The notes: generated from the letters alone by a model not told the origin. DNA of 64,000 bases from Auanema rhodensis (GCA_964057225.1 OZ059894.1:17050001-17114000), one strand, 5' to 3'. Positions 5,300 through 52,500 are shown, counted from the first letter of the stretch. Numbers and translations: made by a program.

Positions 5300-22993
<17,694 letters not shown>

Positions 22994-49339: not shown

Positions 49340-49599
49340 TATTTGGAGTAATTATATAATTTTGAACGTTTACTTTGTAATTTGCAAGTTATTAGATGAT
49401 ACTACATGTCATTTGTACGCTAATGGAAACATATTTCCGATCTCAATGTTTGTATTTTAAACATTTAATAAAATCTTAAATATTTATTGATATTTACATA
49501 GAGGATCACCTCATGGAACTACATTAAGGGTACAATTTCTATATTTTTTTGTTAGTTGATCAAACTATTTGTAGTTCCTTAGTTAGTCATAGAATCAGA

Positions 49600-52500
49600 A
49601 TGTGGCTATCTCGTGTAAATGGTTTGATAAACAGACAATCACTAGGTAAGACTATTCTTCTTAAAGCAGCATTGCTAGAACAACTCCAGCTACGATAAAA
49701 GCGCAGAGAGAAAGAACTGCCATACTGAGAAGTATCATTTTTAATCAATGAAATGTTCAAAACTCACATTATAACCAGCGAGTATAAAGCCAAATCATTG
49801 GAACTGAGGCCTTGGGGTGCCCTTCTATTAATAAAATATATGATAAAAAGCGAAAAAAAAACAAATAAACCTGTTGCGTATGCGAATTTCAGCTTCTTCT
49901 TTGGGGCACCTGTCAAGCTCCATGAGTTCGATAATGTTGTCTGTGCTTCTATCCATTGTTTGCTCTAGCGGGAAGCGCGGAAACGTCAAAAACTGTTACA
50001 AAGTTTTACAATGTTCAATTTGTAATATTTTTCTGAATGGGAATTCAATTGAAACAGTAATTTTCAATTGCTCAAGTCAAGCTTTTCAATCGCCCTAAAT
50101 ACTTCCTTTATTCTATCAAGTAACTTTGACATTTGCTTAAATCAAAGCGTGTTAAGGCAAAATTTCAAAGTTACTAAACAAATATTGAAATAGTGAAGAT
50201 GAGTAAATATTAGAATTTACACGGGTCAGCTTCAAGCATGGAGATTTTATTTAAAAAAAAAGTGAAAACACAAAAAAAAGCTATACGTTTGCCATACATA
50301 TGAAGACGCCATATACTACTACATTTAAGTAAACATTCCCAGACAGAGGTCATCATATGTTGCTTTACTTAGAAGAATCTCAAGAAATATTTATCCATGT
50401 AATAAAGCGATTTTAATTAATCTTTTTCTTTGTTTCAGGTCAAATTGTTCGTAGTTACCATGCTGCTGGATACCAGTATGGCCATCTTCCTGATCCTCCA
50501 AAATCTTCATTTCTTCCTGAAGGTTGAAATTTTTATCCGAAAAATACTTAATATTAGTTTGCAGGTGGAATGAGTCCTGAGGACAGTCAGAGAATTCACT
50601 TAGTAAATGCTTATAGAAGATATGGATATCTACAAGCTGATCTTGATCCATTAAACCTGAAAAAACCTCAAGAGTTGGTTCAAGAATCAAACATTATGTA
50701 TGCTTTTTCTTTTTAGAGTATCTGAGTTGAACCCTGAGGTGTACGGGATTAATACGAGCGATGTTTTACCAGGAAAAGATTTGAGCATGAATGATTTAGC
50801 TGAGCAGTTGAAACTTATTTATTGTGGACCAATGGGTATTGAGTTTATGCATATCAATGTGAGTTCGTATACTTCACTATACAATATTGTACGAACCTTT
50901 TCAGAATTGGGAAGAAAGACAATGGCTATCTCAGAATTTTGAAAATGCTGTAGCAAGTGAGCTCACAAACGAAGAAAGAATTAAACTCGCTAAATTGATG
51001 ATCCGATGTGAAGTAAAACAATTGAATATTTTTTCTTTTGTAAATCATAATTATGTTCTAGGATTTTGATCACTTCTTAGCCACCAAGTTTTCCACTTTG
51101 AAGAAGTATGGAAGTGAAGGGGCTGAAGCTATGTATGGGTTCTTCAGTGAGCTATTTGATACTGCTCCTGAACATAATATTGAACAAGTATTGTTGATTC
51201 TGATATAAATTTTTGGAATTCATACTTTAGATTTTCATCGGCATCGCTCATAGAGGAAGATTGAACTTATTGAACGAAATGATGCAGTTTCCCACGGTAC
51301 AAATGTTTAGAAAGGTAAGCATGTGCACCTTGAAATTTTACTTAAAGAGTTTTAGATTCGAGGAAAAACGGAATTCCCTGAAGATGTTCAAGGATCAGGA
51401 GATGTACTGTCTCATCTCGGTAATTTCTCCACTTAGGATAACAATAAACTAGTTACAGTTTCTTCATTTGATCATACATCCAATGAAGGCAAAGTTCATA
51501 TATCAATGCTTCCCAATCCTTCTCACCTTGAAGCTGTTAACCCAGTAGCCATGGGCAAAGCTAGAGCTCGTGCACGGTTCGTTTCAAGATTGTAAAAAAT
51601 TTTCCAATCTTTTTATATTTAGTAGTTTGGGCGTAGGGGAATATAGTACTGATCGTGGTGCCCGTGTTGGAGATGGTGTTCTCTGTGCTTTGATTCATGG
51701 TGATGGGGCTTTCTCTGGACAGGTTTTTTTTATTTCAAAGAATTTTAGACTAATTTATTTCAAGGGAGTTACTTGGGAATCTCTGGCGTTGAGTAAGGCT
51801 CCTCACTTCCGTTTGGGTGGAACTGTTCATCTTATAACAAATAATCAAATTGCTTTTACTGCTGAATCTCACGTTGGAAGATCATCTACTCATTGCACAG
51901 GCTTGTTTAGTTGCAGATTCAGAAAAGCAATGAATTATTTTAGATATCGCCAAAGCATTCGAGTTCCCAGTCATTCATATCAATGGAGACCATCCAGAAG
52001 TAGAAATTACATAGATATTCTTTTCAAAAAGTTTTATATTTTTTAGGAAGTTGTAAAAGCTACTCGACTTGCTCTAGCTTACCGCCAAAAGTTCCGAAAG
52101 GACATCTTTATCAATCTTATCTGTTTCCGTAAATGGGGACATAACGAATTAGATGATCCCTCTTTTACCCAGCCTCTTATGTATAAAGTAATCTAATTTT
52201 TAAAAATTAACTTTTATTATTTAAATGTTTCAGCAAATCACTTCACGTCAGTCAGTTCCGCGTGAATATTGTGACTTTTTGATTGATGAAGGAGTTTTGA
52301 CTGAAGAGGAAATCAAAAAAGAGAAAGAACAGCATACAGCTAAGCTTTTGGAAGACTTTAGAGCTGTAGATAGTAGTAAACCAGAGTAAAAATACTAGGA
52401 ATTTGATTTTCTGATTTTAATACAATTTTAGAGTAAATCATCTTAATGGATATTGGAAGGGATTCAAACAAGCGCCTGCTGCCGTTGAAAAATGGGATAC

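What the first reader, a model, noticed from the sequence alone, without database searches (positions are those of the whole stretch)
49661..49956. Hidden 3-exon tail-anchored microprotein gene nested antisense in DHTKD1 intron 1
Seen: DHTKD1 intron 1 (49646-50438, 793 nt versus ~45 nt typical) holds three minus-strand exons. They are joined by 46-nt (GTTTAT..TAG) and 43-nt (GTGAGT..TCTCAG) introns in matching phase. The product is 68 aa, with a charged N-terminus and a ~28-residue hydrophobic C-terminus reaching the stop. The ATG has an A-rich context (AAACAATG) and an AG acceptor 8 nt upstream. The ORF track misses it. Inference: it is a tail-anchored membrane microprotein of no family I recognise, possibly coupled in expression to the host enzyme gene.
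Basis: partly seen in the sequence, partly recalled or inferred. Interest (0 to 1): 0.85.

Follow-up and report, generated by a model that had tools for sequence, protein, structure and literature searches.

The report
Conserved nested tail-anchored microprotein gene
The long first intron of a nematode DHTKD1 enzyme gene holds, on the opposite strand, a real three-exon gene for a 68-residue membrane-anchored protein that has kept its sequence, its intron positions and usually this nested location across distant nematodes, but whose function is unknown.

Summary
Minus-strand exons 49956-49871, 49824-49768 and 49724-49661 join in frame to 68 codons. RNA contigs confirm the 793-nt host intron (49646-50438).

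ORF length alone proves nothing: the other strand of the intron gives a 112-codon spliced ORF. Conservation decides it.
- Auanema sp. JU1783 has an annotated 78-aa minus-strand gene at the same place, with the same two phase-2 introns and identical exon 2 and exon 3 lengths.
- Window against Auanema: 77% protein identity (host enzyme 68%), no indels in the exons, differences of 14/7/35 by codon position, pN 0.12 against pS 0.80.
- Orthologues with the same structure occur in Steinernema, Diploscapter, Pristionchus, Necator and two Caenorhabditis species. Four of them are nested in DHTKD1 intron 1.

The product has a cytosolic N-terminus with a conserved acidic motif, a basic stretch next to the membrane, and a 27-32-residue hydrophobic helix that reaches the stop. 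That is a tail-anchored topology. No Pfam, PDB or Atlas family matches it.

Relatives already carry it as "unnamed/uncharacterized protein", so this is a new member of an uncharacterised kind.

Two things remain unshown. The four small RNA runs contain no spliced transcript, only one low-depth unspliced contig. Coupling to the host gene is untested.

The parts
49871..49956 (-). Exon 1 (86 nt). ATG at 49956-49954. Encodes the charged N-terminus with the conserved S-x-[DE]-N-I-[IVM]-E motif and ends AAC AG|GT (phase 2).
   Evidence: 79% nucleotide identity to Auanema without indels. The exon ends in Asn-Arg (AAC AG| or AAC CG|) before GT in Auanema, Diploscapter, C. auriculariae and P. pacificus.
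49825..49870 (-). Intron 1 of the nested gene: 46 nt, GT..AG, 15% G+C, 65% T on the minus strand.
   Evidence: The Auanema counterpart is 40 nt and diverged, with indels. Retained in the single low-depth RNA contig 49803-49965.
49768..49824 (-). Exon 2 (57 nt). Basic stretch next to the membrane (R-R-x-P), then G-L-S-S-x-D-L-x-L-Y, then the start of the membrane helix.
   Evidence: Exon 2 is exactly 57 nt with the same phases in Auanema, Diploscapter, P. pacificus, Necator, Strongylus, C. auriculariae and C. bovis, and 54 nt in Steinernema.
49725..49767 (-). Intron 2 of the nested gene: 43 nt, GTGAGT..TCTCAG.
   Evidence: The Auanema counterpart is 46 nt and diverged.
49661..49724 (-). Exon 3 (64 nt including TAA at 49663-49661). 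The rest of the hydrophobic helix, running to the stop.
   Evidence: Also 64 nt in Auanema, P. pacificus and Necator.
49646..50438 (+). Host (DHTKD1-type E1 dehydrogenase) intron 1, 793 nt. It contains the nested gene.
   Evidence: Spliced RNA contigs in four runs. Other host introns are 39-49 nt. The Auanema intron 1 is about 795 nt.
49574..49645 (+). Host exon 1 (ATG at 49600, 15 codons plus 1 nt). It ends 15 nt from the nested gene's stop codon, so any 3' UTR of the nested gene longer than 15 nt runs antisense over it.
   Evidence: The same tight spacing is seen in Auanema (12 nt) and Steinernema (18 nt).
49483..49507 (-). Conserved block carrying the first canonical AATAAA (49488-49483) I found downstream of the stop on the minus strand. 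It is a candidate poly(A) signal for the nested gene. It could instead be an element of the rnp-1-like/DHTKD1 intercistronic region read on the plus strand.
   Evidence: Nearly identical in Auanema. No RNA support. The function is inferred.
50216..50231 (-). 16-mer AGCTGACCCGTGTAAA about 260 nt upstream of the ATG. It is identical in Auanema and is a candidate promoter or regulatory element.
   Evidence: Not found in the other genera. The function is inferred.
49963..49967 (-). TAG|AG acceptor-like site 6-8 nt upstream of the ATG. It may be a trans-splice acceptor.
   Evidence: Sequence only. The single RNA contig ends at 49965 and carries no leader sequence. Untested.

Best explanation
This is a genuine protein-coding gene, transcribed from the minus strand inside intron 1 of the DHTKD1-type gene. 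It has three exons and two phase-2 introns of the genome's usual size, about 45 nt.

The 68-residue product has three parts: a cytosolic N-terminal region of about 39 residues (an acidic, probably helical S-x-[DE]-N-I-I-E-L-M-E motif followed by a flexible linker), a basic N-R-R-x-P stretch next to the membrane, and one very hydrophobic helix that ends at the C-terminus.

Such a protein cannot use a co-translational signal sequence. It would be inserted after translation as a tail-anchored protein. The long, strongly hydrophobic anchor has no basic residues after it, which points to the ER membrane through the GET/TRC40 route.

Once inserted, the recurring small residues (Ala/Gly/Ser/Thr) on the helix, together with the conserved N-terminal motif, would let it bind and modulate a larger membrane protein or complex.

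Shown here: the reading frame, conserved gene structure, purifying selection, conserved nesting, and predicted helix topology. Inferred: the insertion route, the organelle and the partner-binding role.

The confidence given is for 'real, selected gene for a tail-anchored membrane protein'. ER targeting alone I put at about 0.5.
For: - Gene model and composition contrast.
- Host intron confirmed by RNA.
- Orthologous annotated 78-aa gene at the same place in Auanema sp. JU1783.
- Window against Auanema: no indels in 198 coding nt while both introns change length; 50 of 65 residues identical (host enzyme 68%); differences of 14/7/35 by codon position (chi-square p = 1e-5); pN 0.12 against pS 0.80.
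- Same three-exon, phase-2/phase-2 structure in Steinernema hermaphroditum (annotated, 86 aa, nested), Diploscapter, Pristionchus, Necator, C. auriculariae and C. bovis.
- An uncharged C-terminal span of 27-32 residues with mean hydropathy 2.4-2.8, and at most one residue after it, in every orthologue.
- AlphaFold model of the Auanema protein: helix 47-77 at pLDDT about 90, reaching the C-terminus.
Against: - No spliced transcript was seen in this species. The four available RNA runs are small. They contain only one contig over the gene (49803-49965, depth 2.5), and it retains intron 1.
- No proteomic or ribosome-profiling evidence exists.
- The start codon is not conserved in position. Auanema uses an in-frame ATG further upstream, and N-terminal lengths vary.
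- The P. pacificus assembly has an in-frame TGA in exon 1.
- The gene was not found at the locus in Strongyloides ratti or Mesorhabditis belari.
- The organelle and the function rest on general rules for tail-anchored proteins, not on any test.
Confidence: 0.85

Rival explanations
1. Chance spliced ORF. An AT-rich 793-nt intron happens to contain GT..AG pairs that link three open segments.
For: ORF length alone is not significant. No spliced RNA was seen.
Against: The structure is conserved exon for exon in at least seven other nematode genera, with third-position-biased substitutions and no exon indels. The structure scan hits nothing else in the 64 kb window.
Confidence: 0.02
2. The conserved sequence is a non-coding element of the host gene, such as an intronic enhancer or an antisense regulatory RNA over the DHTKD1 5' end. 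The ORF is incidental.
For: The stop codon lies 12-18 nt from the host exon-1 donor in three genera, so an antisense transcript would cover the host start. Non-coding blocks are also conserved with Auanema.
Against: Non-coding constraint does not predict the 14/7/35 codon-position pattern, pN far below pS, preserved frame, preserved splice sites with freely diverging introns, or a hydrophobic helix kept through different residues in distant genera.
Confidence: 0.04
3. The gene is real, but the product is anchored in the mitochondrial outer membrane (or peroxisome) and works with the mitochondrial host enzyme. The nesting reflects shared regulation.
For: Nesting inside a mitochondrial-enzyme gene is conserved across nematode clades IV and V. 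Tail-anchored proteins do populate the outer membrane (general knowledge).
Against: The anchor is long and strongly hydrophobic (best 19-residue window 2.7-3.15), and basic residues after it are absent in all orthologues but one. By the usual rules that favours the ER. In C. auriculariae and C. bovis the gene lies outside the DHTKD1 5' exons mapped here. S. ratti keeps DHTKD1 without the intron or the gene at this locus. The host is abundant in the RNA runs where the nested gene is nearly silent.
Confidence: 0.15
4. The gene is real in relatives but silenced or decaying in this species.
For: Only an unspliced, very low-depth contig appears in four RNA runs.
Against: The frame, the ATG, the stop and all four splice sites are intact, and the protein is 77% identical to Auanema's. 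The runs are small (13-18 million letters of contigs), and contigs cannot show absence.
Confidence: 0.05

Closest known systems
Uncharacterised nematode proteins CAI4222978.1 (Auanema sp. JU1783, 78 aa), CAD6186778.1 / A0A8S1GVL2 (C. auriculariae, 71 aa), CAB3396916.1 / A0A8S1DZT8 (C. bovis, 92 aa), and the annotated 86-aa gene in Steinernema hermaphroditum DHTKD1 intron 1
   Same: Orthologues. They share the three-exon, phase-2/phase-2 structure, the 57-nt exon 2 (54 nt in Steinernema), the N-terminal S-x-[DE]-N-I motif (weak in C. bovis), the basic-Pro stretch next to the membrane and the C-terminal anchor. In Auanema and Steinernema the place and strand inside DHTKD1 intron 1 are also the same.
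   Different: N-terminal length and start-codon position vary. In the two Caenorhabditis species the gene lies between the RRM gene and the DHTKD1 5' exons mapped here, not inside intron 1. None has a name, a Pfam family or a known function.
Tail-anchored membrane proteins as a class (for example Sec61-beta, cytochrome b5, RAMP4/SERP1)
   Same: A single hydrophobic helix within the last 30 residues, no N-terminal signal peptide, and a cytosolic N-terminal domain.
   Different: No sequence relationship to any of them. Insertion route and organelle are untested.
SERCA-regulating micropeptides (phospholamban, sarcolipin, sarcolamban, 'regulins')
   Same: Overall design: a protein under 100 residues with a short cytosolic helix, basic residues before a single helix that ends the protein, and small residues along the helix. 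This resemblance comes from my memory of the family and is only a lead.
   Different: No Pfam hit to any family at E<=10. No PDB hit to phospholamban or sarcolipin chains with a profile. The features that looked alike in the window protein (R-R-A-x, terminal M-L-L) are not conserved among the orthologues.
Opposite-strand genes nested in introns of animal genes
   Same: A complete small gene lies inside a host intron on the other strand. That intron is the only long intron of the host.
   Different: The pair is conserved in genera from nematode clades IV and V. In three genera the nested stop codon lies only 12-18 nt from the host's exon-1 donor, which forces 3' UTR/5' exon overlap.

Membership tests
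Unnamed nematode microprotein family (Auanema CAI4222978.1 and orthologues) | Three coding exons, both introns in phase 2, middle exon 57 nt | tested here: met
   Window exons are 86/57/64 nt. Auanema has 116/57/64. Diploscapter, P. pacificus, Necator, C. auriculariae and C. bovis all have a 57-nt exon 2. Steinernema has 54 nt.
Unnamed nematode microprotein family (Auanema CAI4222978.1 and orthologues) | Significant protein similarity with a substitution pattern of purifying selection | tested here: met
   tblastn E = 1.4e-18 over three exons. 77% identity, pN 0.12 against pS 0.80, and 14/7/35 differences by codon position.
Unnamed nematode microprotein family (Auanema CAI4222978.1 and orthologues) | Location on the opposite strand in DHTKD1 intron 1, downstream of an RRM (rnp-1-like) gene | tested here: met
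   Window. Auanema, P. pacificus, Necator and Steinernema are nested. The Caenorhabditis species are adjacent rather than nested.
Tail-anchored membrane proteins | Single transmembrane helix within about 30 residues of the C-terminus, with no other hydrophobic segment or signal peptide | tested here: met
   Uncharged span at residues 40-68 with mean hydropathy 2.75. The N-terminal 39 residues are charged. The AlphaFold model of the orthologue has helix 47-77 of 78 residues.
Tail-anchored membrane proteins | Post-translational, GET/TRC40- or SND-dependent insertion with the N-terminus in the cytosol | not testable with these tools
   Needs localisation and insertion assays.
Phospholamban / sarcolipin-type SERCA regulators | Match to the family profiles or to solved members | tested here: not met
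   No Pfam family at E<=10 for the window protein or three orthologues. A profile search of PDB gives only chance hits at E>=0.69, none of them a regulin.
Phospholamban / sarcolipin-type SERCA regulators | Binding to and inhibition of the SERCA pump | not testable with these tools
   Needs co-immunoprecipitation or a Ca-uptake assay with nematode SCA-1.
Expressed, spliced mRNA in this species | Reads joining 49871|49824 and 49768|49724 on the minus strand | tested here: inconclusive
   Four small runs were available, as assembled contigs only. One unspliced contig covers 49803-49965 at depth 2.5, and no spliced contig was found.

The most novel reading that the evidence does not exclude
The pair could be an ancient functional unit, predating the split of nematode clades IV and V.

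- The nested gene's 3' UTR would be obliged to run antisense across the DHTKD1 5' exon and start codon, because its stop lies 12-18 nt from the host donor in three genera.
- That overlap would give reciprocal control of the two genes.
- The tail-anchored product would itself act on the mitochondrial 2-oxoadipate dehydrogenase pathway, for example at the outer membrane.

This would be a conserved sense/antisense host-nested regulatory module built around an unstudied microprotein.
Probability: 0.1. Interest if true: 0.7.

Novelty: new member of a known kind. Interest (0 to 1): 0.45.

Why it matters
The result shows that reading raw sequence can recover a real, selected, spliced microprotein gene that single-ORF scans miss.

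It also defines a nematode-wide family of tail-anchored proteins of about 70-100 residues. Public records hold this family only as scattered "unnamed protein product" entries. It is unannotated in P. pacificus and Necator and mis-modelled in Diploscapter.

The family is more conserved than its housekeeping host enzyme between this species and Auanema (77% against 68% identity), so it probably does something important.

The conserved nesting, with the stop codon a dozen bases from the host's first splice donor, offers a compact natural case for studying sense/antisense interplay in nematode operon-linked genes.

The practical value is modest: better annotation, and a candidate for knockout and localisation in a model nematode.

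Tried and rejected
1. ORF length as evidence. Rejected, because the opposite strand of the intron gives longer spliced ORFs.
2. Word-index protein search with the 68-aa product. It came back blank. This was a false negative: the Auanema orthologue P0269 is in the collection and, by my reading of the two sequences, shares about 14 five-residue words with the query. The same search run with P0269 found only P0269 itself.
I did not send that peptide to any remote tool afterwards. I used public orthologue ids instead and kept the window peptide to local scripts.
4. Atlas search with P0269. It returned only generic short helical look-alikes with scores below 0.9.
5. Pfam and a PDB profile search. 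No family matched.
6. Rfam over 49400-50600. Only sub-threshold plant miRNA chance hits, so no known intronic RNA gene explains the conservation.
7. RNA support. One call on four small contig-only runs gave no spliced evidence.
8. Closest-relative search through the host enzyme. L003 (GCA_036418165) and Strongylus were too distant or truncated. The Haemonchus protein was not on record.
9. S. ratti has no intron at the orthologous place and no hit. Mesorhabditis has a 1.7-kb intron 1 but gave no hit even with a relaxed scan.
10. The C. elegans orthologue and its gene name could not be reached with the tools. Guessed cosmid names gave nothing in the literature.
11. The phospholamban resemblance was considered and rejected as membership.

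Full report
**What is in the sequence**

On the minus strand, an ATG at 49956 opens a frame that runs to AAC AG|GT at 49871. After a 46-nt intron (49870-49825), the frame continues through a 57-nt exon (49824-49768). After a 43-nt intron (49767-49725), it ends in a 64-nt exon with TAA at 49663-49661. The joined CDS is 207 nt, giving 68 residues.

Both introns are phase 2. They have the size (39-49 nt), low G+C (15% and 28%) and T-richness on the transcribed strand that 13 RNA-confirmed introns of the host gene show. The three exons are 42-46% G+C, like host exons.

The host is a DHTKD1-type 2-oxoacid dehydrogenase E1 gene on the plus strand. Its first intron, 49646-50438 (793 nt), is spliced out in assembled RNA contigs of four public runs. 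Host exon 1 (ATG at 49600) ends 15 nt from the nested stop codon.

**Is it more than chance?**

Not by ORF length. When up to two GT..AG introns of 38-60 nt are allowed, the plus strand of the same intron gives a 112-codon ORF and the minus strand gives 68.

A scan for the specific architecture is far more selective. It looks for an AG|57 nt|GT exon open in the right phase, with a basic-Pro start and a hydrophobic end, followed by a terminal hydrophobic exon. It finds only this site on both strands of the 64 kb window, and exactly one site in each of five related loci.

**RNA evidence**

RNA evidence is weak. The only runs found are four small ones from a single study, held as contigs. The host contig has depth 9.5-166. 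Over the nested gene there is a single 163-nt contig (49803-49965, depth 2.5, one run), and it is colinear with the genome, so it retains intron 1.

That contig could be host pre-mRNA, the nested gene's own pre-mRNA, or DNA carry-over. Contigs cannot show absence. Splicing in this species therefore remains unshown.

**Comparative evidence decides the case**

I used a host exon to find DHTKD1 proteins and ranked them against the window. The closest is Auanema sp. JU1783, at 68% identity.

Its locus (L004) carries an annotated 78-residue gene on the opposite strand at 6059-6381, at the 5' end of DHTKD1.

- The window peptide matches it in three pieces at 73%, 81% and 72% identity, E = 1.4e-18.
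- A nucleotide alignment of the whole interval shows the three exons aligning without a single indel. Both small introns and the rest of the host intron are diverged and full of indels. The small introns are 40 and 46 nt in Auanema against 46 and 43 nt in the window.
- Exon 2 is 57 nt and exon 3 is 64 nt in both species.
- Of 56 nucleotide differences in 65 aligned codons, 14, 7 and 35 fall at codon positions 1, 2 and 3 (chi-square p = 1e-5).
- pN is 0.12 and pS is 0.80, which is saturated.
- Protein identity is 50 of 65 residues (77%), higher than for the host enzyme.

The same gene is recognisable in other genera.

- **Steinernema hermaphroditum:** annotated, 86 aa, minus strand, inside DHTKD1 intron 1. 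The stop is 18 nt from the host exon-1 donor. Exons are 146/54/61 nt and both introns are phase 2.
- **Diploscapter pachys:** exons 1 and 2 are clear. Exon 3 lies beyond an assembly gap that misled the public model.
- **Pristionchus pacificus:** unannotated, inside intron 1. Exons 2 and 3 are 57 and 64 nt. The assembly has an in-frame TGA in exon 1.
- **Necator americanus:** unannotated, inside a 3.7-kb intron 1. Exons 2 and 3 are 57 and 64 nt.
- **Strongylus vulgaris:** exon 2 only, because the contig ends.
- **Caenorhabditis auriculariae and C. bovis:** annotated at 71 and 92 aa. The gene lies between the RRM gene and the DHTKD1 5' exons mapped here.

All three annotated proteins I looked up are "unnamed protein product / Uncharacterized protein".

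I found no copy at the locus in Strongyloides ratti, where DHTKD1 has no intron at this place, nor in Mesorhabditis belari.

**The product**

All orthologues end in an uncharged span of 27-32 residues with mean Kyte-Doolittle hydropathy of 2.4-2.8. At most one residue follows it.

Before that span comes [N/H/A]-R-[R/K] and usually a Pro within a few residues. In most species the N-terminus carries S-x-[D/E]-N-I-[I/V/M]-E.

An AlphaFold2 model of the Auanema protein, built on a three-sequence alignment, gives a low-confidence helix at 3-22, a disordered linker, and a confident helix at 47-77 of 78 residues (pLDDT about 90).

This is the topology of a tail-anchored protein. From established rules for that class, a long and very hydrophobic anchor without C-terminal basic residues is handled by the GET/TRC40 pathway and ends up in the ER. 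An anchor in the mitochondrial outer membrane is the main alternative. These last steps are inference.

Small residues recur every three to four positions along the helix in all orthologues. This suggests helix-helix packing with a partner, which is also inference.

**Comparison with what is known**

No Pfam family matches the window protein or three orthologues at E<=10. A family profile finds nothing meaningful in the PDB. The ESM Atlas returns only generic short helical proteins with scores below 0.9.

I considered the SERCA-regulating micropeptides because the design looks similar. The profiles do not match, and the features that looked alike in the window protein are not conserved in the family. 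It is therefore not a member, though a regulin-like mode of action is not excluded.

Two literature searches found nothing on a gene nested in DHTKD1/ogdh-2.

**Arrangement**

An RRM (rnp-1-like) gene sits directly upstream of DHTKD1 in all these nematodes. Some public models even fuse the two genes.

The nested gene explains why intron 1 is the only long intron of the host.

In the window, Auanema and Steinernema the nested stop is 15, 12 and 18 nt from the host exon-1 donor. A normal-length 3' UTR must therefore be antisense to the host's first exon.

The first canonical AATAAA I found on the minus strand (49488-49483) lies in a block that is nearly identical in Auanema. The same block could equally be an operon intercistronic element read on the plus strand. 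In Pristionchus and Necator the spacing is about 137 and 640 nt.

Whether the overlap regulates either gene is untested. In the available runs the host is abundant and the nested gene is nearly silent.

**Verdict**

The feature is a real, selected gene for a tail-anchored microprotein. It belongs to an uncharacterised but already partly annotated nematode family. Its nested position in DHTKD1 intron 1 is seen in genera from clades IV and V. Function, localisation, expression in this species and any coupling to the host remain open.

Noticed in passing
window 50216-50231 (-); L004 about 6640-6625 (-): The 16-mer AGCTGACCCGTGTAAA is identical in the window and in Auanema, about 260 nt upstream of the nested gene's ATG. 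The surrounding intron sequence is otherwise diverged. It is unique in the window and absent from the other genera's loci. It may be a promoter or transcription-factor site.
   Followed up: partly
window 49483-49507: A block (minus strand GATCCTCTATGTA..AATAAATAT) between the rnp-1-like 3' end (about 49447) and host exon 1 is nearly identical in Auanema. It could be the nested gene's poly(A) signal, or a U-rich operon intercistronic element read on the plus strand.
   Followed up: partly
L008 about 5885-5740 (-), Pristionchus pacificus GCA_000180635.4: The orthologous exon 1 carries an in-frame TGA between the conserved N-terminal motif and the exon end, while exons 2 and 3 and all their splice sites are intact. 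The gene is not annotated there. This could be an assembly error, a strain allele or a different 5' structure.
   Followed up: no
L005 2808-3274 and 1782-2511, Diploscapter pachys: The public 76-aa model joins the true exon 1 to a spurious terminal exon. A run of N sits directly after the real exon-2 donor. The real exon 3 lies at 1851-1782.
   Followed up: yes
L007 2737-3334 and L010 2335-2907: In C. auriculariae and C. bovis, the separately annotated 70-aa plus-strand genes contain the 5' exons of DHTKD1 (the G-H-L-P-D-P-P-K exon and the next one). The annotated DHTKD1 models are therefore N-terminally wrong, and a gene of about 325 aa on the minus strand is nested in the following intron.
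   Followed up: partly
P0002, P0177, P0181 (S. ratti, Parastrongyloides, Rhabditophanes): Public gene models of 1231-1250 aa fuse the RRM (rnp-1-like) gene with DHTKD1. This reflects the very short, operon-like spacing also seen in the window (about 130 nt between 49447 and 49574).
   Followed up: no
window 49803-49965: The only RNA contig inside the host intron starts 9 nt upstream of the nested ATG, next to the TAG|AG acceptor-like site, and retains the nested gene's intron 1. It is too shallow (depth 2.5, one run) to interpret.
   Followed up: no
tool behaviour: The word-index protein search missed the Auanema orthologue, which is in the collection and, by my reading of the two sequences, shares about 14 five-residue words with the window peptide. 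Blanks from that tool for very short proteins should not be read as absence.
   Followed up: yes
window 49874-50098 (+): A 74-codon open frame on the plus strand mirrors exon 1 of the nested gene. It is the usual antisense shadow of a coding exon, not a second gene.
   Followed up: no
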